This document shows, in pieces, positions 25,011 to 63,933 of a DNA stretch of 64,000 nucleotides. The translations under genes were made by a program, and so were the position numbers. The DNA lies in NCBI RefSeq assembly GCF_023055435.1, contig NW_025963784.1:806001-870000 (forward strand). The letters are read 5' to 3'. A model generated the notes under the pieces. That model was not told the DNA's origin. It searched no databases and saw only the letters and a list, made by a program, of their open reading frames with translations. The stretch's first letter is position 1. Every line of letters starts with the position of its first letter. This DNA is from Haliotis rufescens (taxonomy: Eukaryota).

Positions 25011-25310
25011 TAAAGAAGAAACTGCTTTACAAAAAGCAGAGGCACAACATCACAATGATATTGCAAGGATTATAACTGAGGCAACAAATATACATGACCT
25101 GACAACCAACCATGGTACAATTATAGATAGGTAAGAGCAATGTGGAAATGATGCTTTAGTTGACAACCCAAACACATATATTGTATACGCTGTTTTGCAG
25201 AACAGTTTTGAAACCCTACGAAATCATATGAGACCTCGAAGAGGACAGTACCATCAGACATTTATCAAAATATCTATCATTTATCTAAGAATATAGACAG
25301 AGCATTTCTA

Positions 25311-25796
25311 TAAGGCCCCCCAAACAACATACTAAAAGTCCCAAATCAATCAATCAAATATGTCATGAGAGACCAACAGTGTATTGATATTGAATGTCTG
25401 TCCATGTCTTGGAGGTCATCTTGGAATTTTGGGCCAGTCAGTTAGTGTGACAAGTTTTATGCACATACGTCCAAGCACACTGTTTCAGATATAAATCTTC
25501 AACAGTCTAAACTCATATTTAGGAAAGTGTCGGCCATCTTGAAATTGCCGGCCATCTTGATGTTTTATAGATTTGTCAATAGTCGAAAACGATCAATAGT
25601 TGTGAATATCATTTTAAAACCATAATATGACTATTTTGCAACAGAACAAATGCTGTTTTTCATCAAAACATTGAACCTCATCTGAAATGTTGAAAATACT
25701 ATTGACAGTTTGTTGCCATATTGGATTATGTAAATTAGACATATTTCCCAAACTGGGATTGCTTGGGACTTTAAGTATGTTGTTTTGGGGACCTTG
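25311..25796. mobile_element. MITE / non-autonomous DNA transposon in the last intron
   Basis: TIRs of about 33 bp (AAGG(C/T)CCCCAAA(A)CAACATACT(A/T)AAAGTCCCAA) flanked by TA. An internally deleted paralogue lies at 62918-63191. Confidence 0.75.
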
Positions 25797-27539
25797 TAGA
25801 CATGCATTGTGGTGAGATGAACTTTATTGCTATTTGTTCCAAGGGAAACCTTATTTTCCATGGGCTACATATGTCAACGGGGACTTGCAAAAACGCTGAA
25901 ATTATGTTAACCAATATTTGAACTTAATTAGGCTTCACTGTGTATACTATTGAATGATTTCGCTGGAGGCTTTTACATCTTGATTTTGTATTATATGTCA
26001 CAATAGCATCACTATTTTGATTAAGTCCTATTTTCTCTGAAATGTTGTGTCAAGTGCATGTGGTATTGTTTCAGGGTGACAACCGATGGCCAGTTTCTTA
26101 TGAAATCATCGTCAGTTCCACATGGAAGCTATAACAATGGCGGTTTGCTTACATCCACACCACCAACATCAACGTGCCCCGTGAACCACGCATCAATAGA
26201 ATTGCCAGGGGTTTATGTTCCGAGTCAACTGGGACAAGCAGTTTCCACAGACAGACAAAGTGTTATTGAAGAGATCGCTTTGCAGTCATCCCAACCATAT
26301 CATATAGACGGAAATCTTAACAACCTCCATACAGATCCTGCACGCATGGAGATACGTTCACCCAATCAAAGAACAGAAGCTATATATGGAAACTCAAGTC
26401 ATGTTCCCACCTGTGTCCATGCTCCAGTAGTTGGTGACACAGTGCCTAGTTCAGATAACACTAGTAATTCTGAGAATGTCATCATTCACTACACTGAGTC
26501 TGGGGAAAAGATAGAGCTGCAGCAGCTCTAAAAGTGGTCTAGAAAGGAGTTATCATTGATAGTATGGTGTACAGTGATACAGTATACATATACAGTTTTA
26601 CAACCTCCTTCAGGAGTCAGTCGTCCGAATTTGGTTTGCAGAAAAAAACGAGTTATTTGTCACTTGTGTCGATGTAGCATTGATGTTTCGGTTAGCATAT
26701 CAATTCCATAAAAAGCAAACATTTTACTCTACAGATGCTAGGACCATAGCTTACTTCATGACGAAAAAATCCTCTATATTGCTTAGAGGATTACATAATA
26801 GATTCTTTCAAATGTTCCTAACTGGACATATGCGTATTTCAGTGTGAACCGAACTTTCCTTAGGCATTGTGTTAAGTTGAATCGAGTGAGTGTGTGAGTT
26901 GGATTTAACGCTGCTTTTAACAGTTTTCAAGTTATATCACTGCGTGACAGCTTAATGTGGGAGGAAAGCCCGAAGTGATGCAGGTCTCAGACGTTTACCA
27001 TTTCGGTGATTTGTGTCAATGTAGTTTTGACGTTTCTGTTTGCATCTCGATTCCATAAAAAAACCATTGTACGTTACAAATTCTAGGAACATGGCTAACT
27101 TTAATGTTTAGAAGATTACATAACAGTTTCTTACAAATGTTTATAACTGAACATATGCAGATTTCAGTGTGTTCCAAACTTTCTTAAAGCAAAGTATTTT
27201 GTTGAAATTACGGGAGTGAGTTAAGATTGACGTACACAATGAATGTTTGCAGCTACATGTCGCTGTGTAAAATATGTACTTGCAGGAACACGTGGGTGTC
27301 TTTCTATCATAGTCGGTATTGTCACTTTGATTTGTTTCTGCACCATTTCCAGTGTCAGAGTTGTGAAGTCTCACTCCCAAAACGAAGCCATGTAACCTGT
27401 TGCAATATAGACTTTAAAGTACGTTCACGGTGACCTCATATTCAGGAATATAATGACTGTTTTTGTAAAACGATTCGTCGTGAAGCACCACTTTAGATTA
27501 GATTGTAGCTAAATATGGTGTACACAGTTTTATTTATAT

Positions 27540-36248: not shown

Positions 36249-37179
36249 TTACACAGACACAGTGGACGGTCCCTGAAGGATGTTGAGAATGTCCTCCCAC
36301 TCAATGGTACACCTGTCATTGCAACTCCACAGTGCTCTGACAAGGACCAGGCTGGTTGCAGTTCTCCCGTTCTTCTCCTTCCACTTTGTAGGCATGTGTA
36401 CAACTTGCATGTATAGTGAACATGGATGTGCAAAAGTCACTTGTTCGATAACCACGAGAGTAAGTCCAAGTTCGATGCCAACAGACTCGAACCCGATCCC
36501 GATGTGACTTGCAACAAGGCTGAGATCTCGTCCCGACACAGGAGTATCCAACATCTCTTCATTTACAGCATATGCATGGTTCAGGTGTCTTGGCCCTACA
36601 ACATTAAACTCACAATAAACTACCTATTTACTTGTGTACATTGTGTGTGATAGATGTAACAACACTCAGTTCGCTTTCATTATTCTAAATTAGCCTCACT
36701 AAACAAAAACAAAAAATACGACCCGTCCATCAATTCATCCACTCATCCATATGGTAATGTGGAAAAAATCATTGTGGTACTCATAGAGCTATACTTCCTC
36801 AAATATTATAAGACAAACAGATCGTTTCAATTCAATGAAACTAAAAAAATGAAACAATGTGTTCCAACGTACCTCTCTCTGCCGGGTCGCGTTTATAATG
36901 GCAATTTATCGAGTTCCCTGTGGTGGTCAGTCTCTGGAATCGAATAAACACAGTTTTAAACACAATTGATAGCTACACTATCATAGCAATGGATCATCTT
37001 ACATAAACTAAACTAAACAAAACAATGCAATAACAAATGCACGTGTACACACGCCGACGCGCATTATAAACATTGATACCTTAACGTTCGAATCGGGAAA
37101 GAACATGAAATAAGCCTGTGGCTGTATATATATCCACCTGATATCGGAATCTTGACCAGCATGAAACATTATTACCCAT
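36249..37179 (-). CDS. Death-domain-only protein, copy DD6 (exons 37179-37138, 36933-36873, 36595-36249; 149 aa)
   Basis: Near-identical to DD2, with MGNNVSC start. One Leu-to-Pro change (HMPTKW) falls in a conserved helix. Confidence 0.8.
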
Positions 37180-40100: not shown

Positions 40101-40384
40101 AAGACTACGATCTTTCATTATTCTTTGTATATTTCTGAGCGATATTTCACAGATCTAATGGAATCCAAAGCATTCCGAATTTAGTATTTCATATTATTAC
40201 ACAGGCCAGACAGGGAGCGGAAAAATCCCCCGATAGGTGTGATAACTATATATATTTGCTATACATGAAGGCAAATCACATAGTCACTTTTACCTCGACA
40301 CATCTGATCGCTGTACAGGAGGGGTGATATCGATATCAAAATATCATGATTCCACCATTTATTGAATGTATATTATAACTGAGA

Positions 40385-41270
40385 TTACAGTGACTGCAGG
40401 ATGTGAGAATGTCTTCCCATTCAATCGTGCATCTCTCTTTACATGTCCAGAGTGCTTTGACCAGGACCAGATAGGTGGCCGAACTGCCATTCCACTGCTT
40501 CCATTTCGTGAGCATGGGTGTGCAACTCTGCCCTGTTGAATAGCCACAACGCTGAGCCCAAATTCAATCTCGACATACTCAAAGCCGATCCCGATATGTC
40601 TCGCAACAAGGCCGAGATCTCGTCTAGTCACTGAAGTCTTGAGTTTTCCGTCATCACAGTGTGATGAACCTATATGACAAATACAAGAGACACAAAATGT
40701 TATTTAACGGCTGTAATTAGATGTAAGAATGTAATATTAGTTCCGGAGAGCTGTTATTCCTACAAAACAGTTTAAGAGAAAAAATAACTGAAATGATAAC
40801 ATGGGCATGGGAAGCTAAAACATATCACAGTAAAACAGTTAAGGAGAAATACAGGAAACCACAGTGGACAATCATGTATCAGCTTTACATATAGAGCATT
40901 TCTATATGGAGCCTGACCAATTCCAAAGAAGCCTGCAGAAACCTATATATGATTCAACGTTTCGCAAATCATTTGAAAGGCAATTCCAGAACCGATGGCC
41001 TCACAAACAAACGCATTCAGCCAGAACATAGATGTTGTTACCCGGGGATTCGCAGCTGAGGGAGTTTGAAGGAGTTGGTTTGACTTCTGATTTCATGAAC
41101 ACTTATTGATATAGAATATGTTTTGAATTAACCTAACTCAGTTACCAAACTATATTATTAAACAGCTTAAAAACAAACTACCAGACAATTTCAGAAGAAA
41201 ATGTATTCATACAATCTTCGAAAGATATATAATGAAGAATGAGTAAAACAAACCTTTCTTAACGATCTGC
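40385..41270 (-). pseudogene. Death-domain gene copy DD7 (paralogue of DD3), inactivated
   Basis: 28-nt and 1-nt deletions in exon 3. A deletion of about 1 kb at ~41270 (equivalent to ~8982-9962) removes most of exon 2, exon 1 and the promoter. Confidence 0.8.
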
Positions 41271-43316: not shown

Positions 43317-44447
43317 TTAACCTGACATAGTGGACGGTCCCTGAAGAATGTTCAGAATGTCTTCCCACTCAATCGTACATTTCTCATTGCATCTCCACAG
43401 TGCTCTGACGAGGACCAGGCTGGTGGCAGATCTTCCATTCTTCTCCTTCCACTTCGTAAGCATGTGTACAACCTGCATGTACAGTGAATATGGGCGTGCA
43501 AACGTGACTTGTTCGATAACCACGAGAGTAAGTCCAAGTTCGATGCCGACACACTCAAACCCGATCCCAATGTGACTTGCAACAAGGCTGATATCTCTTT
43601 CAGATACAGGGATATTCAGCCTCTCTTCATTCACAGCATATGCTTGGTTCCAGGGTGTTGTACCTACAAGAACCATTCACAATAAGCATGTACNNNNNNN
43701 NNNNNNNNNNNNNNNNNNNNNNNNNNNNNNNNNNNNNNNNNNNNNNNNNNNNNNNNNNNNNNNNNNNNNNNNNNNNNNNNNNNNNNNNNNNNNNNNNNNN
43801 NNNNNNNNNNNNNNNNNNNNNNNNNNNNNNNNNNNNNNNNNNNNNNNNNNNNNNNNNNNNNNNNNNNNNNNNNNNNNNNNNNNNNNNNNNNNNNNNNNNN
43901 NNNNNNNNCAATTTTCCCTATCAATATTCTACGTTATTTTAACTTATCTTAAGATTAAATTCACTCACTTGTGGATGCACAAACAATGGGAATAATGTCA
44001 AGCTTGCATCTGATAAAGCATAACGTGACACACAATCCATATCTTACATTTAGTAAAACGATTAATGCGACTGAACGTACCTCTCAGTTCAAGCTGATGG
44101 TTATAATAGCAGGTAATGTGGTCGTCTGTCTTGGACATTTTCTGGAATCAAAATGAACACAATGAGGCATATTCCTGGTGACGCTTGGATCCCGCATATT
44201 GTAAACTTTATACCTGTTTTAAACCACGATTGAGAACTGTAGCATCACAAGAAGTAGGGTAATGTTACATACACTAGTATACAAAAATAAACATAAAGTC
44301 GCAATTGCACGTGTACACACGAGGACGCGCATAAACACTGATGAACAGTGTCACGCTGACATTCATTAATTTTAGGGAAAATACGTGAAGGGAATCTTCA
44401 CCTACCTGATATCTGAATCTTGACCAGTATGCAACAATATTACCCAT
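43317..44447 (-). CDS. Death-domain-only protein, copy DD8 (exons 44447-44406, 44141-44081, 43663-43317; 149 aa, intact)
   Basis: MGNIVAYWSRFRYQ|KMSKTDDHITCYYNHQLELR|GTTPWNQAYAVNEERLNIPVSERDISLVASHIGIGFECVGIELGL... Open frame with canonical splice sites. Confidence 0.85.
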
Positions 44448-45415: not shown

Positions 45416-46600
45416 TTGTGGAATACCAACTCACCACCTCGACCTTTCGTGATGCCTCCCAAGAGAAGAGCAACCGTCAACCACAAGCTTGTGAGGGGAG
45501 CCAAGCAGCCCAGGACAACCAGAAGACAAACCCCGGGAGTACACATTATGCAGGAGGCAACAGCTGATGGTGAGTCTTCCAATTACGGAAATATCGAAGG
45601 TGGCAACAGAATTAACGTACAATCGGCGCAGCTTGTAAATGCCGTGCAGGCTGCCAACTCGGCTACCCAGGTAAACGAGCAACTGGAAAAAATACTCCAG
45701 TTGCTGGAACATTCAGCGCCTGGCCCGGTTAGCGCAAACCAACAGGTAAGGCGTGGTTTTAGTTCTCCCGCCATTTCGCCCAACATAGGGAGAATCCCCG
45801 ATGCTCTCAACGAGGCCGACGGTGACGCGGCTTGGCCAGCCAATCACACCGCAAGATACGGGGATTCCCTTTCTTTCCGTGCGGACGGGATAGACGCGCA
45901 CGTCAAACAACAGGTGAGGGAAAAAATCTGGCGTGGCGAGTATGTCGACCTCGGCACAATACTACCAAACAACGAGGGAGGTCACGAGGACGGTACGATT
46001 ACCATGGCGTACGACTCCTCAGGTAAGGTAATTTTTAAACCAATTAAGCAGCAACCAAAGCGTCTGTCCCTGGCAAGCTGGACTTCAGCTTTCCACATTT
46101 TCATGTGTATATATGTTAGTAGGCACTCCGAAGTCCGCACACCCCAGGGGTTGCTGTCCTACATGGAAACCATAAGGACGGCGGCACTTCGATTCGGGGG
46201 GGATGCCTGGTCAACCTACGACCAACAATTCCGACACAGAATGTCAAGGGACCCCTCACGACGCTGGGACAACATCGACGGGGAGTTGTGGCTGAAGTAC
46301 ATGGTAACACAGCCGGTACGACAACCAGAATCAGGCGGACGGGGCGCAATGACACGCGTACAGGGGGACATCGCCAGTCAGGTATGCTGGGATTTCAATA
46401 AATTTGGCTGTAGCAGGGTCAACTGTAAGTACACTCACAAATGCGGTAAGTGTGGCAAACATTCCCACAGCTCTAGGACCTGCTTTCGAGGGAATGGGGT
46501 CCAACCGACCCCATACAAGCCCAATCAGCCTTTTCCTAACAGAAAACAAGCCGGCAAGGCAGGTAAATTCAATGGCCCCTTCCCCCGTGGACCTCAATGA
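45416..46600 (+). CDS. Gag-like ORF1 of the Ngaro/DIRS element (first ATG at 45452)
   Basis: KIWRGEYVDL, WTSAFHIF, WSTYDQQFR and a C-terminal zinc finger CWDFNKFGC..C.YTH.C..C..H....C. Confidence 0.8.
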   Translation: MWNTNSPPRPFVMPPKRRATVNHKLVRGAKQPRTTRRQTPGVHIMQEATADGESSNYGNIEGGNRINVQSAQLVNAVQAANSATQVNEQLEKILQLLEHSAPGPVSANQQVRRGFSSPAISPNIGRIPDALNEADGDAAWPANHTARYGDSLSFRADGIDAHVKQQVREKIWRGEYVDLGTILPNNEGGHEDGTITMAYDSSGKVIFKPIKQQPKRLSLASWTSAFHIFMCIYVSRHSEVRTPQGLLSYMETIRTAALRFGGDAWSTYDQQFRHRMSRDPSRRWDNIDGELWLKYMVTQPVRQPESGGRGAMTRVQGDIASQVCWDFNKFGCSRVNCKYTHKCGKCGKHSHSSRTCFRGNGVQPTPYKPNQPFPNRKQAGKAGKFNGPFPRGPQ

Positions 46601-48183
46601 AATGGCACCTTGGTTACGCCAATATGCTAGGGTCAATTACAGAGATGCAAATTATTTATGGGTAGGATTTAGCTTTGGCTTTAAGCTCGAGTTCCAGGGA
46701 AGCCGCACGGGTCGCCTGGCACGAAACTTGCGATCAGCCACGCACCAAGACACGGCAGGCTACGTGAAACAAAAACTACAAAAGGAAGTCGACCTTGGCA
46801 GGATGGCGGGCCCCTTCAAGGACACCCCCCTAGACAACCTCCAAGTATCCCCAATGGGCCTGGTGCCCATGAAGCAGCCAGGATATGGTCAGCACCTGGG
46901 TAAGCATGCGGAGGAATTCCGTCTAATTCACCATCTATCCTATCCCAGGGGTAAATCTATAAATGACTTCATAGACACAGAGGCCTGCTCCGTTGTGTAC
47001 GCTCGATTTGATGAAGCTACCCATATGGTTCAACAACTGGGAAAGGGAGCACTACTAGCAAAATTCGACATTCAGTCGGCCTTTAGAATTATACCAGTCC
47101 ACCCATCCGATTTCGAGCTGCTAGGCATCAGATTCGAAGGTGAGTTCTATTTCGATAAATACTTACCATTTGGCTGCTCCATATCTTGCGCCATATTTGA
47201 AACGTTTAGTACCTTCTTGCAATGGTGCATGCAATCGCATCTTCCAACGCGTCCGATCATGCATTACCTGGATGACTTCCTAACGGGGGGCCAAGCAGGC
47301 ACCAGCCACTGCTCAGACAACCTCAACGGATGCGTGAATACACTTGAACAGCTTGGGGTTCCTATTGCGCACGACAAGACGGTGGGCCCCACAACCAAAC
47401 TGACATTCCTAGGGCTGGAAATCGACACCATTGCAATGCAGATCAGAATCCCAGAGCCCAAGATCAAGGAGGCAACAAGAGAAATCCATGACATCCTGTC
47501 AACAGGTAACATCAAGGTCACAAAAAGGGCCCTTCAGTCCCTCATAGGCAAGCTTAACTTTATGTGCAGGGCTATACCAATGGCAAGGGCATTCAGCCGC
47601 AGGCTAATCGACCTGCTTAGCAAAGGTAAGCAACCATTTCACCACATTAGGATTACCACCTGGGTCAAGGAAGACCTACAAATGTGGTTAACATTTCTTA
47701 CGAGTTACAACGGCATTTCAGTGTTTCAGGACCAACTATGGGTGGACAGCGATTTCCTCCAGCTGTTTTCAGACGCAGCGGGCGGCGCCGGCTTTGGGGC
47801 CTACATGCAGGGCAAATGGTTTAACGGCGCATGGCCAACCCAGTGGGTGACGGATGGAACTACACGGGACTTGACGCTCCTGGAGCTGTTCCCCATCACA
47901 CTGGCCATCCAAATCTGGGGCAAGCAACTCGCAAACAAAAAGGTCCTCTTTTACAATAATCAACAAGCAGTCAACCAAGGCCCCCAGAGTGATGAGCCTA
48001 CTCCGTCGCCTAATCCTGCAGTGTCTCCGATTTAATATTATGTTTAAGGCGAAGTATGTATGTTCCACTGCTAACACTATTGCCGATGCTCTCTCGAGGT
48101 TTCAGCTCAAACGCTTCCGAGAGGCAGCACCAGCCGCGGACCAGAACCCCACACCTATCCCGTGCAACATATGGCTGATCTGA
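46404..48183 (+). CDS. Reverse transcriptase / RNase H ORF2 of the Ngaro/DIRS element, frameshifted near 47955
   Basis: FRLIHHLSYP, LAKFDIQSAFR, LPFGCSIS, HYLDDFL. RNase H motifs LFSDAAG and LLELFPI. The DN motif is lost by deletion, and NTIADALSRFQ continues in another frame. Confidence 0.9.
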
Positions 48184-52946: not shown

Positions 52947-55900
52947 ATGGCGCCTAATCCGAAACCACCCGAGCCTTACCTGACAGGGAGAACCTCAGCC
53001 CTTAAAGTGGAGGAGATTGTTAACATTCTGAGGAGTCCAGATGAGAGCAATACCATCCAGACTGCCCCCGTCACACCCCAGGGAGGGGAGGTGTACCTCT
53101 ATAAGATAACCTCGGGAATGAGAGAAGGTGAGGCAGTTGTGTTCAGGCTCAATATACCGCGGGTAAGGGATTAATACATATGAACAATGTTAATATTTCA
53201 TGGAAAGCTGTTATTATTTATTAAACAATTTGAATTCAAAGGGTTTGTTATGCACACATGACCAATGTCCTCAAAAGCCACATTCATATACATGTACGTT
53301 ATTAGTAATAGTCTGCTTGACGTCGGGGTCACCCTGCCCTGGTATCAGCTTCCTTGTACAGCCCTGTGATAACAGATTTTATGTTCGTTAATATTGTTGA
53401 CAAGTGATTGTCATGCAATAAGTGACTACGTGAATTAAGTTTATTTGTCTATATCATTGTTTAAAACGACTTCTTTTGCAAAATGTTCTATCTTTGTTTT
53501 TCTTTTCACTCTTTCCATCCCCTTTACAACAATTGTGTACTTAAATAATGAACATTGTTTGATGTCAACTTATAGAAAATCCATTGTTGGATTAATCAAT
53601 ATGGGCTAAACAAGAATCAAGTATCGTGTTGCATCTCAGGGAAGGAGAAAAGGACATGGTATTTATCATCACAACCTCTAATACAACATATTTATGCATG
53701 ACCTTACAGCTGATTTGGCATTAAGGTGGGTTGATTTTAGAGTTATGTTGCACTATTGACTGTTCACAGTTTTATTAATTAACATCTACATCACAGGTGA
53801 CACACTAACACACAAAGAATTTTGGGGGATAGTTCATCTTCAGGATTACAACATTGTTTGCAATGTTATGATATTAATTTCTATTTGCAGATATCTGGAA
53901 GGATGACAAATATCACTTCAGAAGTGATGGAACTCGGAAGCAGCCTGGCTCAAGTCCAGTCATAGTGAAGCAGTACCACAAGGCTAACACCGAGGACAAG
54001 ACAACAACAAGGGCCTTTGTCAGAGAAGCATCGTATCTGTACAACCAGCCTCTGAAACACGTTCTAATGCAATATATCGGGGACCACACACAAGCACAGC
54101 CTGCTCCCCAACGCAAGAAGCGTGGCCAACAGACAGTTAATACCTCAGGTGACAGTAAATGTAGGAAAGTAGAATCAACTGGTGGAGCTGTGCAGTCAGG
54201 TGTCACGGAGAACACTAACTCCAACCTGGACCCTGAAGATCATTCATCACCGACAGAATTGGAAGACAATGGTAAATCAAACAGTATTCTAGGTGTAACA
54301 TTGAATGGAGCAAAGGTGTCAGAGACTGAAACAAAGAATGATCACGACACAAATCAGAAACGCTGCAGGACAGGAGATCATAGAAGTGATGATGACATTG
54401 AATATTTGGGTACAACGTCAGGCTCCCCTGTCAAGAAACCTCGTTTGCACCCTCAAGTTGAAAATGACAACACAGTTTTAACCTTTGTCAATAACACACA
54501 CTATTCTTATCTGTACACTTTTCTAGAAGAAGTAGAAAGAAATCGTGATGTGATAAAGGTCGTGCAACAAGTCCTAGCATTATCTAGGTGCTGGAACAAG
54601 GACTGTACCAACAAAGGCAATCCGTGCTTCTCACTCATTGAAGAGGTTGACAAAAACTGGAATCTAGATTCAATAAAAGCAAGGAACTTGGTTAAATGTG
54701 CTGTTAATACTGACGGTCTGAGCTGGAACCAAGACCGGTCAGTTTACATAAACCTCATCGCAGCAGTACTTGTTGGAGCATGCCATACCAGGACTGAAGT
54801 ACAGGACTTTGTGAAAACACTGAAGGATCCTCCTTCACACCTGCAGCATGTACAAGAGGACGTCCCCCTGTCACGTGAATGTACATACACAGTTGGCTGC
54901 TACACCATCAGAGGAGATGTTCTGTCTCGCCTGGAAACCAACGAGTGGCTGACAGATGAAGTAAGTTGTCCACCTGCAATATTTGCACAATCACACAAAC
55001 TACGTGCCTAGTTAACCATCCAAGAAAATCATTTCATAGAGCATGAGAGGCTTTCGATTTCATCAAATGATGTCAGTATTAGATATTAACTGGGGGCGTG
55101 AGGGTGGTGAGTGGTTCAGTCACCTAATACTCATTGATAGTGCCTTGAGGTAGGGGAGCTTGAGCTTGAGTTTGGTTAAACGCCTCTTTTTGACAGTAGT
55201 GTCATGGTGAGTTTGATTAAATTCTGAAGAAAGTGATGCACATCTTTGACGTTAACCACTTTGTTGATTCCCATGGTGAATCTGCATAGCGAAATGCGGC
55301 GCCTTGGACCACTGAGACCCCATCTTAAGATTAATACAGTAACTTTTGGCGGTTTCTTCTTTTTACACCAGTATTAGTTAACTATCAATTCATATAATGG
55401 TGCTTATTATCAACTCATTGCCATGCATCTCGATTCTGCAATGATAACACTACTCACCTGCAATGGGCATTGTACACAAAATCTAGTACATCACCAGTCA
55501 AATTGTCAGTCATTGCTAACAGCCGATATATTCTCTTCATGATAAATATGTGATGTGCAGCGGATCCTGCTTTGATTTGAAATTACAAGCGTTCCTTTTG
55601 AAGCAAACGCATTGGGCGATTAAACAGTATAATAAACATTCTAATAAATGAACTCTTTCCTGTCCAGATCATGGACACATACCTGCACCTCCTGGAGGGA
55701 GAGTGGTGTTCCCGTGTCAGCTTCCACTGTCTGGTGCTGCCTACAGAGACAATCCTACTGTGGGAGGCAGGACAGTACACAGACAGAATAAGGGGGAAAG
55801 ATGTGAGTGACGTGAGATTTTTATATTTCTTATAATTCTTTCATTCCGAGTGTACTATTGCATGTCCACCATACCATGAACAAGGGCAAGACTCGAAATA

Positions 55901-58900
55901 TATTTTGCAGTAGTTGTATATTTTTTGTGATAACATATGATTCGTCTATGCCATGATTGCGTATTCAGTATGCTAGAAGTTGTCACTTGCAATTGTGCGC
56001 ACGAAGCGACCATATGCTGCAATGGGTTTCAATTGAGTCAAAGCCAGTAACCCCATTGATCATAATGCTATTCGTTTTCAATATGCAGTTACAAAAGCAG
56101 ATATTGCACATGAACATATTCGTCTTGCTACATATTATTTTACGAAGTGAAAATCTGGTTGTCAGAGAGAGGTCTTTAGAAGTTCTAAGTTCCAAGTTCA
56201 TGATACCAATTCACTAATATCTCTGTTACTGCATCATATCCATCTTATGTGAAGCACGTGTTTCTTGATATATTGATCATACACCGGAAAGGCATTTGTT
56301 GTGAACTTTCAGGAAAATTTGACAAACTACACGTGGATCTTAATGCCAGTGAACATGCCACGTAATCAACATTGGGTGCTACTGGTGGCTAATGTCAAGG
56401 ATGGAACAGTGGGCGTGGTTAATTCTAAACCCTCCTTAGATGTGGAGGACAAAGTTGTAGAACACTGGAGGTAGGTGGACAGAACAGTGGGCGTGGTCAA
56501 TTCTAAACCCGCCTTAGATGTAGAAGACCCATTCGTACAACACTAGAGGTAGATACAAAAAACAAAGAGGACGTGTGGCTGCACATTATAAATGTTAAAA
56601 CCAAGCTATCCAATTTGAAATGTTGAAATGTTGATTTGTCAAAAACAAACATGAATGTAAATAAGACCCATCGAAAAATTCTCGATACACTCACATTTGT
56701 AGCTTTTACTTTTGGGTAGAAGATATAGAACAACTTGTTCACAGGGTTACTCAGTTCCCCAGATGGGTACACTGTGTGAATGATTATAACGCCATAAATA
56801 CAGTTATGTCACTGATTCATTTCAACCATAACATCTGTATTTGCTAACATTAAACCTAATGGTGGACAAAGCAGGAGAGAATATCAGAAATGCAAGGACC
56901 GGATATTTTAGACACTGCTGTATTTACCTTCTGCTCTACTTTTACTTTAACACCAGTCCACATGAGTTGAAGATGTTATTGCCATCGAGTAATATACATG
57001 TATTCCTCAGGCTCTTTGTAAACCACTTGAAATCTACGTCTAAGGAATGGAGCAAGTCATGGATGAAGAAACAGTACCCAGTGATAGAACAGTCTGATGG
57101 ACACAGCTGTGGGATATTCGTTCTGATGGTAGGTTGGTTTGAAGCTATGTTTTTGATATGAAAGGCAACATGTGTCTCAAAAACCACGTATGAAAGATAC
57201 CTTTTCATTTCTAACCTTCATATTCTCAGGCTGCTGATGCAATTTTGTCGGAGACGTCTCCAAGCATCATGAGGAACTGTCACGTAGAGAAATACAGGCT
57301 GTATGTGCTTCAGAGGATACTACAGTATGCCAAGGCCAAGGGAGATATGCAGGGTGGAGGAAATCACATGATGGCAGTTGATGGACAGAGTAATGTCACA
57401 AACGAAATTCAAACTGTAACGCTGGAGACAAGAGATGTACTGGAAAATATCTGTACAATATCAACAGAGCAAGGAGGTCCAACTATTCATGAAGAGGATG
57501 GACATGAAACACATGAAGGAACCGACTCTGCTGTCGCCAGTGATGAAAGTATGCATTCTGGAGATCATTACTATGTTACGGAATTGTAAGTCGTTACGCA
57601 AGGTATTATATTTTAAATCTACATGTGCAATGTTGTACACTGCTTTCTAACAAACGCTATTTGTTTTCACAGATACAGAGGACTATCCATGTTTGGATCA
57701 GCACTTGTTGCATAAGCAGGAGATGGCGTGCATGTTAGTGGTTGCTTTGGCGGAGAATAACCTGGAGGAGAGGATGCTATGGGCAGGGTCTGACACAGGG
57801 ACTCGCGTGGAAAGAGAAACCTACAAAAAATATATTGTTTGGGCACTTAAGGCTTTTGACATCAATGAAAAAGAATACACTGAAAATGTGATGAAACCTA
57901 TTTTATCCCAATTAACGGGATGCTGTCTCCATCATGAAGCAGGCTCATATAGAATAAGAAATCATAAAGTAGCAATAAAGCTAAGAGAAATACTGCTACG
58001 TGATGTTAGGCAGTTGGTTGAAAGGATGGATCTCGAGTTCATATTTCGTTATGTGACATTTAGAGATGATCCAACTGAAGAGGAACAACTAAATGTGTCT
58101 TTCAACCTCGAATTGAAACATGATGATCTGCATATTGTAGCGAAGCGGTTTGCTACAGCTTTACACGGCAGAAAGTTTGCCTTTGTGTGCATGCATTCCC
58201 TATTCCAGGTAGAGACATTTGTTGATATGGTTTGGGAGAAATTGTTGCATAATATGAACAAGGACAGTTCTGTACTGTTGAAAGTATTGTCAAATAATGA
58301 CATTGTACATGGATATTCCTTTCTGTTTTGGGCGAGCATCACAGACAACTCACATTTGTTGAGGAGAGCATTGTTCAGTGTTCAATTGAATGCAGAGAAC
58401 AGAAAGGAAGCTTTGTTTGGAAGTTGCTTTGGGAATAGTTTGGCCAACTTCGATTACTTGTTTTCCAATAAAAACTGGAAGTTGGATAAGTTGTGGATGA
58501 CACTACCCAAACTCCCAAGACCTCTTATCATTAAACTGCAGTTGGCAGTTGCAGATGATCTGGGAGAAAAGTTTGGTAAATGTTCACTTTTGGACATTGC
58601 CTGTATGGGTGGGTTGTCTGCAGTGGCTTCCAGATTGTCACATTTGATAAAGATGAGCAAGAAGAAAAACAGGTCAAGAAAGAATACATATGTACATTTT
58701 GCATCCTTGTGCCTAAAGGGCAAAGATACCATGGATACAAGTACAAAAATTGGAAAACTGAATGTCAATATAAAAGGCCCTGAAGGATCAACACCTTTAC
58801 ATTACGCATGTGCAGTTGGAAATGTTAGCATTGTAAGCTATCTGTTACAGGAAGTAGTGGACATTGGTGAGCAAAACAAGAAGGGTGAAACTGGGCTTCA

Positions 58901-61900
58901 TTTGGCATGTATATATGGAAACGCAGAAGTTGTTACAATGTTATTAAAGAACAAGGGAATAATTCATGTGAAAGATAATGCTGGCCGCACACCTCTACAT
59001 GATGCATCCAGGCAGGGACATAGGGAGGTTGTGGAGGTGTTATTACAGAACAAGACAAATGTGGATGAGAAAGATAAGGAAGGCCGCACACCTCTACATG
59101 ATGCATCCTGGCAGGGACATAAGGTGAGGTGAGGTGAAATGGGGTTTAACGTCGCGTCCAAGATTATTGCACTTATATAGCGACGTCAGGGACATAAGGA
59201 GGTTGTGGAGCAGTTATTACTGAACAAGGCAAATGTGAATGAGAAACGTCGAGATGGCAGCACACCTCTACATGATGCAGCCTTGCAGGGACATAGAGAG
59301 GTTGTGGAGGTGTTATTACAGAACAAGGCAAATGTGGATGAGAAACATCAAGAAGGCAGCACACCTCTACATGATGCATCCTGGCAGGGACATAGGGAGG
59401 TTGTGGAGGTGTTATTACAGAACAAGGCAAATATGGATGAGAAAGATCAAGAAGGCAGCACACCTCTACATCTTGCAGCCTACCAGGGACATAGGGAGGT
59501 TGTGGAGGTGTTATTACAGAACAAGGCAAATGTGCATGAGAAACGTAATGATGGCTGCACACCTCTACATAATGCAGCCTACCAGGGACATCGGGAGATT
59601 GTGGAGGTGTTATTACAGAACAAGGCAAATGTGGATGAGAAACATCAAGAAGGCAGCACATCTCTACATCTTGCAGCCTACCAGGGACATAGGGAGGTTG
59701 TGGAGGTGTTATTACAGAACAAGGCAAATGTGAATGAGAAACGTAATGATGGCCGCTCACCTCTACATCATGTGGCCTACCACGGACACAGGGAGGTTGT
59801 GGAGGTGTTATTACAGAACAAGACAAATGCATATGAGAAAGATAAGGAAGGCCGCACACCTCTACATGATGCAGCCTGGCAGGGACACAGGGAGGCTGTG
59901 GATGTGTTATTACAGAACAAGGCAAATGTGGATGACAAACGTGATGATGGCCGCACACCTCTACATCTTGCAGCCTCCCACGGACATAGGGATGTTGTGG
60001 AGTTGTTACTACAGAACAAGGCAAATGTGGATGAGAAACGTCAAGATGGCAGCACATCTCTACATGATGCAGGCTACCGGGGACATAGGGAGGTTGTGGA
60101 GTTGTTATTACAGAACAAGGCAAATGTGAATGAAAAACGTAATGGTGGCCGCACACCTCTACATCATGCAGCCAACCAGGGACACAGGGAGGTTGTGGAG
60201 GTGTTATTACAGAACAAGACAAATGTAGATAAGAAAGATAAGGAAGGCCGCACACCTCTACATGATGCAGCCTGGCAGGGACACAGGGAGGTTGTGGATG
60301 TGTTATTACGGAACAAGGCAAATGTGGATGACAAACGTGATGATGGCCGCACATCTCTACATGATGCAGCCTACCGGGGACATAGGGAGGTTGTGGAGGT
60401 GTTATTACAGAACAAGGCAAATGTGAATGAGAAACGTAATGATGGCACCACACCTCTACATCGTGCAGCCTACCAGGGACATAGGGAGGTTGTGGAGTTG
60501 TTATTACAGAACAAGGCAAATGTGGATGAGAAACATCAAGAAGGCAGCACACCTCTACATCTTGCAGCCTCCCACGGACATAGGGAGGTTGTGGAGTTGT
60601 TATTACAGAACAAGGCAAATGTGGATGAGAAAGATAAGGAAGGCCGCACACCTCTACATCGTGCAGCCTGGCAAGGACATCGGGTGGTTGTGGATGTGTT
60701 ATTACGGAACAAGGCAAATGTGGATGACAAACGTGATGATGGCCGCACACCTTTACATGATGCAGCCAGGCAGGGACACAGGGAGGTTGTGGAGGTGTTA
60801 TTACAGAACAAGGCAAATGTGGATGGGAAAGATAAGGAAGGCCGCACACCTCTACATCTTGCAGCCTCCCACGGACATAGGGAGGTTGTGGAGTTGTTAT
60901 TACAGAACAAGGCAAATGTGGATGAGAAAGATAAGGAAGGCCGCACCCCTGTACATCGTGCAGCCTGGCAAGGACATCGGGTGGTTGTGGATGTGTTATT
61001 ACGGAACAAGGCAAATGTGGATGACAAACGTGATGATGGCCGCACACCTTTACATGATGCAGCCAGGCAGGGACACAGGGAGGTTGTGGAGGTGTTATTA
61101 CAGAACAAGGCAAATGTGGATGGGAAAGATAAGGAAGGCCACACACCTCTACATCTTGCAGCCTCCCACGGACATAGGGAGGTTGTGGAGTTGTTATTAC
61201 AGAACAAGGCAAATGTGGATGAGAAAGATAAGGAAGGCCGCACACCTCTACATCGTGCAGCCTGGCAAGGACATCGGGTGGTTGTGGAGGTGTTTTTACA
61301 GAACAAGGCAAATGTGGATGAGAAACGTGAAGGTGGCAGCACACCTCTACATCTTGCAGCCTACCAGGGACATTGGATCGTTGTGGAGTTGTTATTACAG
61401 AACAAGGCAAATGTGGATGAGAAAGATAAGGAAGGCCGCACACCTCTACATCGTGCAGCCTGGCAAGGACATCGGGTGGTTGTGGATGTGTTATTACGGA
61501 ACAAGGCAAATGTGGATGACAAACGTGATGATGGCCGCACACCTTTACATGATGCAGCCAGGCAGGGACACAGGGAGGTTGTGGAGGTGTTATTACAGAA
61601 CAAGGCAAATGTGGATGGGAAAGATAAGGAAGGCCGCACACCTCTACATCTTGCAGCCTCCCACGGACATAGGGAGGTTGTGGAGTTGTTATTACAGAAC
61701 AAGGCAAATGTGGATGAGAAAGATAAGGAAGGCCGCACCCCTGTACATCGTGCAGCCTGGCAAGGACATCGGGTGGTTGTGGATGTGTTATTACGGAACA
61801 AGGCAAATGTGGATGACAAACGTGATGATGGCCGCACACCTTTACATGATGCAGCCAGGCAGGGACACAGGGAGGTTGTGGAGGTGTTATTACAGAACAA

Positions 61901-63933
61901 GGCAAATGTGGATGGGAAAGATAAGGAAGGCCACACACCTCTACATCTTGCAGCCTCCCACGGACATAGGGAGGTTGTGGAGTTGTTATTACAGAACAAG
62001 GCAAATGTGGATGAGAAAGATAAGGAAGGCCGCACACCTCTACATCGTGCAGCCTGGCAAGGACATCGGGTGGTTGTGGAGGTGTTTTTACAGAACAAGG
62101 CAAATGTGGATGAGAAACGTGAAGGTGGCAGCACACCTCTACATCTTGCAGCCTACCAGGGACATTGGATCGTTGTGGAGTTGTTATTACAGAACAAGGC
62201 AAATGTGGATGAGAAAGATAAGGAAGGCCGCACACCTCTACATCGTGCAGCCTCCCACGCACATAGGGAGGTTGTGGAGTTGTTATTACAGAACAAGGCA
62301 AATGTGGATGAGAAAGATAAGGAAGGCCGCACACCTCTACATCGTGCAGCCTGGCAAGGACATCGGGTGGTTGTGGAGGTGTTATTACAGAACAAGGCAA
62401 ATGTGGATGAGAAACGTCAAGATGGCAGCACACCTCTACATCTTGCAGCCTACCAGGGACATCGGGTGGTTGTGGAGGTGTTATTACAGAACAAGGCCAA
62501 TTTGGATGAGAAACGTCAAGATGGCAGCACACCTCTACATGATGCAGCCTGGCAGGGACATAGGAAGGTTGTGGAGTTGTTATTACAGAACAAGGCAAAT
62601 GTTTATGAGAAAGACGATAAAGAAGAAACTGCTTTACAAAAAGCAGAGGCGCAACATCACGATGATATCGCAAGGATTATAACTGAGGCAACAACTTTAC
62701 ATGACCTGACAACCAACCATGGTACAATTATAGATAAGTAAGAGCAATGTGGAAATCATGCTTGAGTTGACAGCCCAAACACATATATTGTATACGCTGT
62801 TTTGCAGAACAGTTTTGAAATCTCACGAAACCATATGAGACCTCGAAGAGGACAGTACCATCAGACATTTATCAAAATATCTATCATTTATCTAAGAATA
62901 TAGACAGAGCATTTCTACAAGGCCCCCCAAACAACATACTAAAAGTCCCAAATCAATCAATCAAATATGTCATGAGAGACCAACAGTGTATTGATATTGA
63001 ATGTCTCTCCATGTCTTGGAGGTCATCTTGGAATTTTGGGCCAGTCAGTTAGTGTGACAAGTTTTATGCAAATACGTCCCAGCACACTGTTTCAGAGATA
63101 AAAGCTTCAACAGTCTAAACTTATGTAAATTAGACATATTTCCCAAACTGGGATTGCTTGGGACTTTAAGTATGTTGTTTTGGGGACCTTGTAGACATGC
63201 ATTGTGGTGAGATGAACTCTATTGCTATTTGTTCCAAGTGAAACCTTATTTTCCATGGGCTACATATGTCAATGGGGACTTTGCAAAAACGCTAAAATTA
63301 TGTTAACCAATATTTGAACTTAATTAGGCTTCACTGTGTATACTATTGAATGATTTCGCTGGAACCTTTTACATCTTGATTTTGTATTATATATCACAAT
63401 AGCATCATTATTTTGATTAAGTCCTATTTTCTCTGAATTACTGTGTCAAGTGCATGTGATATTGTTTCAGGGTGACAACCGATGGCCAGTTTCTTATGAA
63501 ATCATCGTCAATTCCACACGGAAGCTATAACAATGGCGGTTGGCTTACATCCACACCACTAACATCAACGTGCCCAGTGAACCAGACATCAGTAGAACTG
63601 CCAGGGGTGTATGTTCCGGGCCAACTAGGACAGGCAGTTTCCACAGACAGACAAAGTGTTATGGAAGAGAGATACATCGCCTTGAAGTCATCCCAACCAT
63701 ATCATATAGACGGAAATCTTAACAACCTCCTTACAGATCCTGCACGCTTGGAGATACGTTCACCCAATCAAAGATCAGAAACCATATATGGAATCTCAAG
63801 TCATGTTCCCACCTATGTCCATGCTCCAGTAGTTGGTGACACATTGCCTAGTTCAGATGCCACTAGTAATTCTGAGAATGTCATCATTCACTACACTGAG
63901 TCTGGGGAAATGATAGAGCTGCAGCAGCTCTAA
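52947..63933 (+). CDS. CG-1-like / Ulp1(C48) protease / ankyrin-repeat protein, copy B (exons 52947-53127, 53891-54960, 55668-55802, 56313-56470, 57011-57128, 57230-57548, 57673-62737, 63471-63933; about 2477 aa if 59124-59198 is spliced out)
   Basis: All introns are GT-AG with compatible phases; the exon 6 donor is the least certain. Motifs: EEIVNIL..P.TPQGGEVYLY..WKDDKYHF..FVREASYL..LMQYIGD (CG-1-like); WLTDE, QHWVLLV, VVNS, EQSDGHSCG (C48 peptidase); TPLHxAAxxGH repeats. The only stop lies inside the insertion, at 59130-59132. Confidence 0.75.
58982..62620 (+). repeat. Tandem 99-bp ankyrin array, about 36 units, with 297-bp and 792-bp higher-order duplications
   Basis: Same consensus as the copy A array. 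An 8-repeat block ending GHWIVVE recurs at a 792-bp offset (for example 61342 and 62134). Confidence 0.9.
59125..59186 (-). mobile_element. 62-bp SINE 3'-end insertion in the ankyrin exon, with 13-bp TSD
   Basis: CAGGGACATAAGG is duplicated at 59112-59124 and 59187-59199. The insert matches ~16003-16063. Confidence 0.9.

What the first reader, a model, noticed from the sequence alone, without database searches (positions are those of the whole stretch)
52947..63933. Unusual architecture: CG-1-like DNA-binding domain + Ulp1/C48 protease + helical region + about 40 ankyrin repeats
Seen: exons 1-2 give EEIVNILRS..TAPVTPQGGEVYLYK..DIWKDDKYHFR..VKQYHKA..FVREASYLY..VLMQYIGD. By eye this tracks the CG-1 (CAMTA) pattern EI..IL..P..P.SGSLFLF..FRKDGH.W..YY.H..FQRR.YWL..IV.VHY. 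Exons 2-6 give a C48 peptidase that the ORF track splits. NLS-like (PQRKKRG, PVKKPRL) and SIM-like (SDDDIEYLG) motifs lie between the two. Established: CAMTAs combine CG-1 with ankyrins but have TIG and IQ domains rather than a protease, and Ulp1 domains are known cargo of Mutator-like and Zisupton transposons. Inference: a chimeric gene with a transposon-derived N-terminus joined to a repeat sensor. No transposase catalytic domain is visible.
Basis: partly seen in the sequence, partly recalled or inferred. Interest (0 to 1): 0.85.

Follow-up and report, generated by a model that had tools for sequence, protein, structure and literature searches.

The report
Transposase-derived CG-1/Ulp1 protease–ankyrin gene in abalone
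This is a real, expressed abalone gene that joins a CAMTA-type (CG-1) DNA-binding domain and a SUMO-protease-like domain, both apparently inherited from a Mutator-like transposon, to about 40-45 ankyrin repeats, and it belongs to a tandem gene family found so far only in abalones.

Summary
I read nine + strand exons at 52947-63933, giving about 2,480 aa. Spliced contigs from four RNA-like runs show the six GT..AG joints from exon 1 to exon 7. These include 57548|57673, which joins the protease exons to the helical/ankyrin exon, so the stop at 57587-57589 is intronic.

- **CG-1:** exon 1 and the start of exon 2 match the two colinear halves of Pfam CG-1. A full-length relative passes Pfam's threshold. 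A paralogue's domain folds confidently, and its best PDB matches are Ssr4, WOPR, GCM, NAC and WRKY, the clan in which CG-1 was placed.
- **Protease:** the C48 domain keeps His, Gln and Cys, but Asn replaces the Asp.
- **"Helical region":** about 150 aa are unassigned and about 210 aa are degenerate ankyrin repeats.
- **Origin:** the N-terminal module is homologous (hhalign E 4e-22) to the N-terminus of MULE transposases, some of which have CG-1 – MULE – C48 – PHD. One such element lies about 0.4 Mb from the family's array. The gene has no transposase core.
- **Family:** about 20 distinct copies, all named members from Haliotis, under purifying selection, interleaved with death-domain genes.

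Function is inferred, not shown. First readers noted the same architecture on other DNA of this genome (s1-813598, s1-805557, s1-816368).

The parts
52947..53127 (+). Exon 1: start codon and N-terminal half of the CG-1-like domain (helix plus first strand)
   Evidence: Pfam CG-1 positions 6-43, 15.1 bits. 9 of 11 paralogous exon-1 equivalents hit CG-1 as their only family, best E 3.6e-4. Joint 53127|53891 seen in 3 runs.
53891..54090 (+). Exon 2, first ~67 codons: C-terminal half of the CG-1-like domain, with invariant D..x3..F (the DxxxW position), Q-P, Y-x-G
   Evidence: Paralogue equivalents hit Pfam CG-1 positions 40-114. Invariant columns in A1/A3. dN/dS 0.16 among 9 close paralogues.
54091..54460 (+). 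Exon 2 middle: low-complexity linker with basic NLS-like and acidic SIM-like motifs
   Evidence: Translation. Variable in length and sequence among paralogues. Disordered in the model of the paralogue.
54461..54960 (+). Exon 2 end: conserved helical pre-domain running into the start of the C48 domain (W-L-x-D-E)
   Evidence: Conserved block in A1. Helices at pLDDT 80-96 in the paralogue model. Joint 54960|55668 in 4 runs.
55668..55802 (+). Exon 3: C48 N-terminal helices
   Evidence: Aligns to the C48 regions of P0006 and P0003. Joint 55802|56313 in 2 runs.
56313..56470 (+). Exon 4: C48 core with catalytic His (H-W) and Asn at the Asp position
   Evidence: Pfam PF02902 25.6 bits, over the 20.7 cut-off. 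Alignment. Joint 56470|57011 in 3 runs.
57011..57128 (+). Exon 5: C48 oxyanion Gln and catalytic Cys (Q-S-D-G-H-S-C-G)
   Evidence: Weak Pfam hit to C48 positions 161-177. Alignment. Joint 57128|57230 in 4 runs.
57230..57548 (+). Exon 6: end of the C48 domain plus an acidic linker. The donor is at 57548|57549, and the in-frame stop at 57587-57589 lies in the intron.
   Evidence: Joint 57548|57673 in 4 runs, with 175-255 nt on the shorter side. Single contigs span exons 4-5-6-7.
57673..59123 (+). Exon 7: ~150 aa unassigned helical/hairpin domain, ~210 aa degenerate ankyrin repeats, then 3.6 canonical ankyrin repeats
   Evidence: AlphaFold2 model, pLDDT 74. All 50 best PDB matches are ankyrin proteins over residues ~152-364, Z 9-11. 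Pfam Ank. Conserved at 22-24% identity in the giant paralogues.
59124..59198 (+). Short intron 7 (66 or 75 nt, both multiples of three), flanked by a 9-bp direct repeat
   Evidence: Read from the sequence only: donor AAG|GTGAGG, acceptors at 59189 or 59198. Not tested with RNA.
59190..62737 (+). Exon 8: 35 ankyrin repeats of exactly 33 aa, including an 8-repeat block duplication. Variation is concentrated at repeat positions 20-22, 24, 29, 32 and 33.
   Evidence: TRF period 99, 34.6 copies, 86% matches. Per-position entropy. Pfam. The donor at 62738 was read from the sequence; otherwise the frame stops at 62739-62741.
63471..63933 (+). Probable exon 9: 153-aa tail with no known domain
   Evidence: In frame with the donor at 62738. 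Present ~9-10 kb downstream of exon 2 in 28 paralogous places at 84-99% identity, 24 of them without a stop. No Pfam family. The splice was not tested with RNA.

Best explanation
This is a bona fide, expressed nine-exon gene of the red abalone (Haliotis rufescens). It encodes a protein of about 2,480 aa. The parts, in order, are a zinc-less CG-1-type DNA-binding domain of the WRKY/GCM1 fold, a disordered basic linker, a C48/Ulp1-like cysteine protease (His, Asn, Gln, Cys), an unassigned domain of about 150 aa, about 45 ankyrin repeats and a 153-aa tail. Shown: the domains, the splicing of exons 1-7, purifying selection, and the tandem family. Inferred origin: the CG-1 and C48 parts descend from a Mutator-like (MULE) transposase of the type CG-1 - DDE core - C48 - PHD. 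That ancestor lost its catalytic core and was fused to an ankyrin array. The gene then multiplied by tandem duplication in the abalone lineage, with ankyrin number and surface residues diversifying. Inferred mechanism: the protein enters the nucleus, and the CG-1 domain tethers it to specific DNA, possibly sequences related to the ancestral transposon's binding sites. The variable ankyrin solenoid selects protein partners. The protease removes SUMO or another ubiquitin-like modifier from them, or cleaves them. The co-amplified death-domain genes on the opposite strand suggest a role in innate immunity, cell death or genome defence.
For: Gene and transcript: six GT..AG joints from exon 1 to exon 7 appear in contigs of four RNA-like runs from four studies, with introns almost uncovered. 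Single contigs span exons 4-7.

CG-1: the exon-1 and exon-2 halves match colinear halves of PF03859. The full-length relative P0006 (H. cracherodii) scores 30.9 bits, over the 23.5 cut-off, and also has C48 and ankyrin repeats. The family profile retrieves proteins with CG-1 at 56-137 bits. The fold is alpha-beta5 at pLDDT ~95, and its top PDB matches are Ssr4 Z 8.1, WOPR 7.8 and 7.5, GCM 7.3 and NAC 7.2, as PMC9252788 reports for CG-1.

Protease: PF02902 passes its cut-off, and His, Gln and Cys are conserved.

MULE link: P0083 is CG-1 (36.5 bits) + MULE. P0107 is CG-1-like + MULE + C48 + PHD. 8 of 24 longer relatives carry MULE. hhalign gives probability 99.5%, E 3.7e-22 over 137 columns, including a ~70-residue extension beyond the CG-1 domain that the long abalone paralogues share with the transposases. 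The abalone's own MULE + C48 element is at C594:42.334 Mb, 0.4 Mb from the array.

Selection and family: dN/dS is 0.16 (CG-1 half) to 0.33. There are 26 exon-2 copies at 79-100% identity, about 20 of them distinct, all on the + strand at ~30-35 kb spacing. All named members are from Haliotis.

Death-domain genes: at least 150 matches, almost all confined to the same intervals and on the opposite strand.
Against: No biochemical function was tested. The window's own exons do not pass the CG-1 threshold singly, and the joined protein was not searched. The folded N-terminus was a paralogue's (P0005, about 35% identical), not this copy's. The usual catalytic Asp is Asn in this copy and in most family members, so activity is not assured. 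One relative (P0175) has lost both His and Cys. No single contig spans the whole mRNA, and with ~90% identical paralogues the contigs may come from several copies. The joints 7|8 and 8|9 were not tested. The direction of transfer (transposon to host gene) rests on distribution only. No terminal inverted repeats were found around the nearby MULE. The relation between this family's C48 and the MULE C48 is only ~23% identity (E 4e-10 at best) and was not compared with the host's own SENPs. The immune role rests on neighbourhood alone.
Confidence: 0.7

Rival explanations
1. There are two genes: a short CG-1/protease gene that ends at the stop at 57587-57589, and a separate ankyrin gene starting in exon 7.
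For: An in-frame stop follows exon 6 if the donor at 57548 is not used. Some database models are truncated (P0005 680 aa, P0011 lacks the N-terminus).
Against: All four runs show the joint 57548|57673, with 175-255 nt on the shorter side. Depth drops over the bin holding the intron (57549-57672). Contigs span exons 4-5-6-7. RefSeq models in three Haliotis species carry CG-1 + C48 + ankyrin in one protein.
Confidence: 0.04
2. The unit is not a host gene but cargo of a mobile element. On this view the copies arose by transposition of a non-autonomous MULE, and the reading frame is decaying.
For: The N-terminal module is homologous to MULE transposases. There are many copies. Some copies carry stops, for example the second copy in this window.
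Against: The copies lie head-to-tail on one strand at regular ~30-35 kb spacing within one chromosomal interval and its unplaced scaffolds (C6, C72). They share intron positions and neighbouring genes, which is the pattern of tandem segmental duplication. dN/dS is 0.16-0.33. The gene is spliced and expressed. There is no DDE core.
Confidence: 0.05
3. The transfer went the other way: a MULE captured the CG-1 and C48 parts from a host gene of this kind (transduplication), or the two acquired them independently.
For: MULEs are known to capture host fragments, including Ulp1 domains (Kaonashi elements; PMC13317346). The C48 similarity between family and MULE is modest.
Against: MULE-type relatives of the N-terminal module are numerous: 636 representatives at E<=0.001, and 8 of the 24 longer ones scanned carry MULE. 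The fusion with ankyrin repeats was seen only in Haliotis. An N-terminal WRKY/GCM1-fold DNA-binding domain is the standard layout of MULE transposases (Babu et al. 2006, as cited in PMC9252788). The shared ~70-residue extension after the domain is part of the transposase.
Confidence: 0.15
4. The protease domain is catalytically dead and serves only as a SUMO/Ubl-binding or scaffold module. The protein would then be a DNA-tethered ankyrin adaptor.
For: Asn replaces the catalytic Asp in this copy and in P0001, P0006 and P0011. P0175 has lost His and Cys.
Against: His, Gln and Cys are kept in nearly all members, and P0003 keeps Asp. From my own knowledge, not tested here: some clan-CE proteases work with a Cys-His-Asn triad, for example the African swine fever virus pS273R protease.
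Confidence: 0.2
5. The N-terminal domain is a generic WRKY/GCM1-fold domain of MULE transposases, and 'CG-1' is only the nearest Pfam label, not specific kinship with the CAMTA domain.
For: The abalone's own MULE ORF gets a weak WRKY hit rather than CG-1. The window's exons are below the CG-1 threshold. No CG-1 structure exists in the PDB for comparison.
Against: CG-1 is the best or only Pfam family for the family's N-termini. It passes the curated threshold in P0006, P0083 and others at up to 137 bits. No conserved Cys/His zinc ligands occur among the invariant columns, as in the zinc-less CG-1/WOPR/Ssr4 subgroup. The D-x3-aromatic motif is invariant.
Confidence: 0.1

Closest known systems
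CAMTA / SR transcription activators (CG-1 - TIG - ankyrin - IQ)
   Same: Both have an N-terminal CG-1-type DNA-binding domain, with the two halves colinear with PF03859, followed further on by ankyrin repeats. Both have basic nuclear-localisation-like motifs.
   Different: This gene has no TIG and no IQ domain (no Pfam hits). It has a C48 protease and about 45 ankyrin repeats rather than a few. It belongs to a tandem multigene family. Its CG-1 domain is nearest to transposase-borne ones and, in the long paralogues, carries their ~70-residue extension.
MULE (Mutator-like) transposases with an N-terminal WRKY/GCM1-fold domain and a C-terminal Ulp1 domain (for example plant Kaonashi/KI-MULEs), and the CG-1 - MULE - C48 - PHD proteins found here (P0083, P0107, P0139)
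   Same: The N-terminal domain plus its extension is homologous (E 3.7e-22). The order of DNA-binding domain then C48 is the same. A related element lies 0.4 Mb from the array.
   Different: The gene has no DDE/MULE core, no SWIM and no PHD. Instead it has introns, an ankyrin array, tandem rather than dispersed copies, and purifying selection.
Domesticated MULE transposase genes (FHY3/FAR1, MUSTANG)
   Same: These are host genes that keep the transposase's DNA-binding domain for a cellular role.
   Different: Those keep the degenerate transposase core and SWIM domain and act as transcription factors. This gene has lost the core and kept the protease instead.
SENP/Ulp1 deSUMOylases (peptidase family C48)
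   Same: The Pfam C48 domain is present, with His, Gln and Cys in the usual order and spacing.
   Different: Asn stands at the Asp position. The domain is flanked by a DNA-binding domain and a giant ankyrin array. Substrate is unknown.
Ankyrin-repeat sensors of fungal and animal NLR/STAND proteins
   Same: Both have a long, near-perfect ankyrin array with variation at the binding surface, copy-number variation among paralogues and tandem amplification. There is a weak language-model resemblance of the pre-ankyrin region to the winged-helix/DUF7791 arm of fungal NLRs (score 0.84, lead only).
   Different: No NTPase domain was detected anywhere. The resemblance is below the tool's own reliability line.

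Membership tests
CG-1 domain (Pfam PF03859) | Score at or above the curated cut-off (23.5 bits) | tested here: inconclusive
   Window exon 1 alone scores 15.1 bits, and exon 2 alone has no hit. The joined exons were not searched. Family members do pass: P0006 at 30.9 bits. Transposase relatives pass too: P0083 at 36.5 bits, others up to 137 bits.
CG-1 domain (Pfam PF03859) | Whole domain covered colinearly | tested here: met
   Exon 1 matches model positions 6-43. Exon-2 starts of paralogues match 40-114. Full-length relatives match 5-114.
CG-1 domain / WRKY-GCM1 clan | Alpha-beta5 fold like Ssr4-N, WOPR and NAC (Holm 2022), with the D-x3-W loop-stabilising motif | tested here: met
   The paralogue model has H15-23 and five strands at pLDDT ~95. 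Its top six PDB matches are Ssr4, WOPR (two), GCM, NAC and WRKY33 at Z 8.1-5.5, and the next unrelated match is at 4.7. D6 and F10 are invariant in A1, and the transposase relatives have D-x3-W. The model is of a paralogue, not of this copy.
CG-1 domain | Sequence-specific DNA binding | not testable with these tools
   Needs EMSA, PBM or DAP-seq.
CAMTA family | TIG/IPT domain and IQ calmodulin-binding motifs after CG-1 | tested here: not met
   No TIG or IQ hit in any exon or in full-length relatives. This is not a CAMTA.
Peptidase C48 (Ulp1/SENP) | Pfam PF02902 above its cut-off (20.7 bits) | tested here: met
   Exon 4 alone scores 25.6 bits. Relatives score 44-63 bits over model positions 2-206.
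Peptidase C48 (Ulp1/SENP) | Catalytic His, Asp, Gln and Cys | tested here: inconclusive
   His (exon 4), Gln and Cys (exon 5) are present. Asn stands at the Asp position in this copy and most members, and Asp is kept in P0003.
MULE transposase (PF10551 / Transposase_mut) | DDE catalytic core | tested here: not met
   No MULE hit in any exon or in the full-length relatives of the family. P0107 residues 190-660 find nothing at this locus. hhalign covers only the N-terminal 142 columns.
Ankyrin repeat proteins | Tandem 33-aa repeats matching PF00023/PF12796 | tested here: met
   34 Ank stretches in exon 8 and 3 in exon 7. 99-bp period, 34.6 copies.
STAND / NLR | P-loop NTPase (NACHT or NB-ARC) before the repeats | tested here: not met
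   No NTPase family hit in the window's exons or in P0001, P0003 or P0006. Only a weak feature-level resemblance of the pre-ankyrin region.

The most novel reading that the evidence does not exclude
Two linked readings. (a) The CG-1 domain, so far known as the hallmark of CAMTA transcription factors, is primarily a DNA-binding domain of a widespread clade of Mutator-like transposases (CG-1 - DDE - C48 - PHD). CAMTAs and this abalone family would then be independent domestications. (b) In abalones the domesticated DNA-binding/protease module, fused to a hypervariable ankyrin array and co-amplified with death-domain-only genes, forms a new two-gene nuclear surveillance system against viruses or transposons, without a STAND NTPase.
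Probability: 0.2. Interest if true: 0.8.

Novelty: new variant of a known kind. Interest (0 to 1): 0.6.

Why it matters
Three points.

1. **A sequence-level link for CG-1.** In the held library, CG-1 had been tied to the WRKY/GCM1 clan only by predicted structure (PMC9252788). This result ties it directly to Mutator-like transposases, the classic carriers of that fold. That makes the origin of the CAMTA DNA-binding domain testable. Full-text searches found no paper connecting the CG-1 domain with transposases or with Ulp1 plus ankyrin.

2. **A clean animal example of domestication.** A transposase has kept its DNA-binding and protease parts, lost the catalytic core and gained a repeat array.

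3. **A candidate abalone immune locus.** Abalones are farmed and threatened animals with poorly known immunity. A large, expressed, fast-diversifying tandem family interleaved with death-domain genes is a candidate immune or genome-defence locus worth expression and association studies.

Tried and rejected
- The joined, spliced protein was never built or searched. Exons were searched one by one by reference, so there is no whole-domain Pfam score for this copy.
- The long paralogous 'exon 2' ORFs of 517-967 aa (L013-L018) gave no significant Pfam family as whole ORFs (one gave three sub-threshold, unrelated hits). They are long versions of exon 2, not intronless genes.
- BLASTP of window exon 2 against the transposase P0107 was not significant. 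Only the family profile shows the link.
- The PDB holds no CG-1 relative by sequence, so a direct CG-1 fold match cannot be made.
The contigs of the CG-1 - MULE - C48 proteins could therefore not be inspected for terminal repeats, and their organisms remain unknown.
- No inverted repeats of at least 20 bp were found in 10 kb around the abalone's own MULE.
- Foldseek on the exon-7 model gave nothing at E<=0.001. VIA-align shows ankyrin for residues ~152-364 only, and residues 1-150 stay unassigned.
- The protein-atlas hit to fungal NLR winged-helix/DUF7791 clusters scored 0.84, below the tool's reliability line, and was kept as a lead only.
- Read laying is capped at one call, so the joints 7|8 and 8|9 were not tested.
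- No listed run is on record as RNA. I take X1, X2, X5 and X11 for RNA because their contigs skip introns at GT..AG.
- Stretches of N in the window (about 33.5-33.7 kb and 43.7-43.9 kb) were left alone.

Full report
**Observation.**
From the splice signals I read this model:
- exon 1: 52947-53127
- exon 2: 53891-54960
- exon 3: 55668-55802
- exon 4: 56313-56470
- exon 5: 57011-57128
- exon 6: 57230-57548
- exon 7: 57673-59123
- exon 8: 59190 (or 59199) to 62737
- probable exon 9: 63471-63933

Together these give about 2,480 aa. Searched exon by exon, Pfam gives CG-1 as the only family for exon 1 (15.1 bits, E 0.02, model positions 6-43). It gives Peptidase_C48 above its cut-off for exon 4 (25.6 against 20.7 bits), a weak C48 hit for exon 5, and overwhelming ankyrin hits for exons 7 and 8.

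**One transcript.**
Contigs of four runs from four studies were laid on 53040-58800. The runs are labelled only as guessed RNA, but they leave most intronic bins at or near zero depth and skip the introns at GT..AG. All six predicted joints are seen:
- 53127|53891 in 3 runs
- 54960|55668 in 4 runs
- 55802|56313 in 2 runs
- 56470|57011 in 3 runs
- 57128|57230 in 4 runs
- 57548|57673 in 4 runs, with 175-255 nt on the shorter side

Single contigs span exons 4-5-6-7.

There are limits. No contig spans everything. With ~90% identical paralogues the contigs may come from several copies. Joints 7|8 and 8|9 lie outside the laid stretch.

Exon 9 is supported indirectly. It is in frame with a donor at 62738. 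It recurs 9-10 kb downstream of exon 2 in 28 paralogous places, 24 of them without a stop.

**Organism and family.**
A relative found by the profile search (XP_048244847) sits on a contig of 54,236,743 bases, the length of contig C594 of this genome. The genome is therefore Haliotis rufescens.

Exon 2 has 26 matches at 79-100% identity. All are on the + strand, spaced about 30-35 kb apart on C594:41.61-41.89 Mb and on the scaffolds C6 and C72. Several pairs have identical scores and are probably duplicate assemblies, so about 20 copies are distinct. Further paralogues at about 30% identity are interleaved or lie elsewhere. Some of them have a giant last exon, with open frames of 2,500-3,000 aa.

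Open frames through the ankyrin exon range from 431 to 2,745 aa among close copies, so repeat number varies widely. All named members are 'uncharacterized proteins' of H. rufescens, H. cracherodii, H. rubra and H. asinina.

Among nine distinct close paralogues, dN/dS is 0.16 for the CG-1 half, 0.34 for the linker and 0.33 for the pre-protease block. A second, partly broken copy lies at about 18.5-26.5 kb of this window.

**Is the N-terminus a CG-1 domain?**
Four independent lines agree.

1. The Pfam CG-1 model was run over the whole 1.33-Gb genome in six frames. Besides CAMTA-like loci on C212, it found ten exon-2 starts of this family's paralogues at model positions 40-114 with 16.9-22.3 bits. 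These are colinear with the exon-1 match to positions 6-43. One further weak hit (C24:25720263, 16.8 bits) was not identified. 9 of 11 exon-1 equivalents and 5 of 12 exon-2 starts hit CG-1 on their own, with best E values of 3.6e-4 and 1.4e-4.
2. A profile of 16 exon-2 equivalents (A1) was searched against 1.84 billion representatives and found 636 proteins at E<=0.001. Among them the full-length H. cracherodii protein P0006 has CG-1 at 30.9 bits (above the 23.5 cut-off) + C48 + ankyrin. P0001 and P0003 (3,808 and 4,108 aa) have the same order of domains. Non-abalone hits have CG-1 at 56-137 bits, among them a Capitella 'CG-1 domain-containing protein'.
3. An AlphaFold2 model of P0005, the H. 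rubra orthologue of paralogue L014, gives residues 1-125 at pLDDT about 95 with one helix and five strands. Among 48,161 PDB chains the six best matches are Ssr4-N (7k7v, Z 8.1, 121 residues aligned), WOPR (4qtj 7.8; 4m8b 7.5), GCM (1odh 7.3), NAC (7xlj 7.2) and WRKY33 (5.5). The next unrelated chain scores 4.7. Holm 2022 (PMC9252788) placed CG-1 in the WRKY/GCM1 clan together with these families and describes the same alpha-beta5 topology and a D-x3-W loop-stabilising motif.
4. In the family alignment D6 and F10 are invariant, the transposase relatives have D-x3-W, and no Cys/His zinc ligands are conserved.

No CG-1 structure is in the PDB by sequence, so a direct match is impossible. The protein is not a CAMTA, because TIG and IQ are absent.

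**Protease.**
The C48 domain runs from the end of exon 2 (W-L-x-D-E) to the start of exon 6. Aligned with relatives, this copy has the catalytic His (exon 4) and the oxyanion Gln and catalytic Cys (exon 5). Asn stands where Ulp1 has Asp. Most family members share the Asn, P0003 keeps Asp, and P0175 has lost His and Cys. From my own knowledge, some clan-CE proteases use Cys-His-Asn, so activity is plausible but not shown.

**The 'helical region'.**
The first 364 aa of exon 7 were modelled at pLDDT 74. Residues ~152-364 are degenerate ankyrin repeats: all 50 best PDB matches are ankyrin proteins at Z 9-11. Residues 1-150 are helices with a beta hairpin and remain unassigned. A protein-atlas resemblance to winged-helix/DUF7791 modules of fungal NLRs scored only 0.84 and is a lead only. 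No NTPase domain exists.

Exon 8 holds 35 exact 33-aa repeats, including an 8-repeat block duplication. Variation is concentrated at positions 20-22, 24, 29, 32 and 33, the usual ankyrin binding surface.

**Transposon origin.**
Among relatives of the N-terminal module:
- P0083 is CG-1 (36.5 bits) + MULE transposase.
- P0107 is CG-1-like + MULE + C48 + PHD.
- P0139 is MULE + C48 + PHD.
- P0144 adds SWIM.

Of 24 longer non-abalone hits, 10 carry CG-1, 8 MULE, 4 PHD and 3 C48.

Profile-profile comparison of the family with seven such transposases gives probability 99.5% and E 3.7e-22 over 137 columns. These columns cover the CG-1 C-half and a ~70-residue extension (P-H-G-N-S-K ... R-T-C-P-S-V) that the long abalone paralogues share with the transposases. 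This window's subfamily has lost that extension.

The abalone genome has its own element at C594:42,334,119-42,337,084. It has an ORF with a weak WRKY hit + MULE + Transposase_mut, followed by an ORF with C48 (23 bits), about 0.4 Mb from the array. No inverted repeats were found around it.

The family's C48 is about 23% identical to the C48 of P0107 (E 4e-10 for P0003). No DDE core is present in the gene.

Ulp1 domains in MULEs are documented for plants (Kaonashi; PMC13317346). MULE-type relatives are numerous, whereas the ankyrin fusion was seen only in Haliotis. The simplest history is therefore domestication of a transposase that lost its core. The reverse direction is not excluded.

**Context.**
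Between the two copies in this window, on the minus strand, lie short ORFs with a Death domain. The ORF at 43320-43676 scores 23.1 bits against a cut-off of 22.6, and the one at 36252-36554 is weaker. At least 150 matches to this ORF are almost all confined to the same intervals of C6, C72 and C594:41.59-41.92 Mb, always on the strand opposite to the CG-1/C48/ankyrin genes. The two gene kinds were therefore amplified together. This is the only hint of an immune or cell-death role.

**Literature.**
Full-text searches found no paper linking the CG-1 domain with transposases, or CG-1 with Ulp1 and ankyrin. The single hit for 'MULE transposase' plus 'CG-1' concerns a nematode gene named Cg-1.

**Verdict.**
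It is best filed as a new variant of known kinds: a transposase-derived host gene and a lineage-specific ankyrin expansion. The wider point is that CG-1 is a DNA-binding domain of a clade of Mutator-like transposases. First readers noted the same architecture on other stretches of this genome (s1-813598, s1-805557, s1-816368).

Noticed in passing
window 36252-36554, 40362-40631, 43320-43676 (minus strand): Short death-domain-only ORFs lie between the two family copies (Pfam Death, 23.1 bits for the third). At least 150 matches in the genome are almost all confined to the same tandem array and lie on the strand opposite to the CG-1/C48/ankyrin genes.
   Followed up: partly
window ~18471-26531 (+ strand): A second copy of the same gene family: exon-2 equivalent at 18471-19543, C48 exons at ~20871-21934, ankyrin repeats at ~23100-25134, tail exon at 26058-26531. 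It carries stops in exon 2 and in the helical exon, so it is probably a pseudogene. An identical-scoring twin lies at C6:234672.
   Followed up: partly
G000:C212:299555-806118: The strongest CG-1 matches in the genome (64 bits, CAMTA-like, two exons each) occur seven times at ~70-140 kb spacing on one contig. This is either a tandem array of CAMTA-like genes or repeated assembly.
   Followed up: no
G000:C594:42334119-42337084 (L042:3120-6081): A Mutator-like element with a 714-aa ORF (weak WRKY, MULE, Transposase_mut) followed by a 230-aa ORF with a C48 domain, about 0.4 Mb from the array. Degenerate copies lie on C334, C556 (three in tandem), C24 and C46. No terminal inverted repeats were found within 10 kb.
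   Followed up: partly
window 59124-59198: The short intron inside the ankyrin array is flanked by a 9-bp direct repeat (GGACATAAG) and has two possible acceptors, both keeping the frame. This looks like an insertion turned into an intron, as another first-reader note proposes. It was not tested with RNA.
   Followed up: no
window 45416-48035 (+ strand): Retroelement remains: one ORF with a reverse transcriptase domain (53 bits), preceded by an ORF with a weak CCCH zinc-finger hit. They lie in the spacer upstream of the gene.
   Followed up: no
proteins P0009, P0010, P0012, P0013: Proteins with two to five tandem CG-1 domains, one of them from the annelid Capitella teleta. I do not know this architecture for CG-1.
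   Followed up: no
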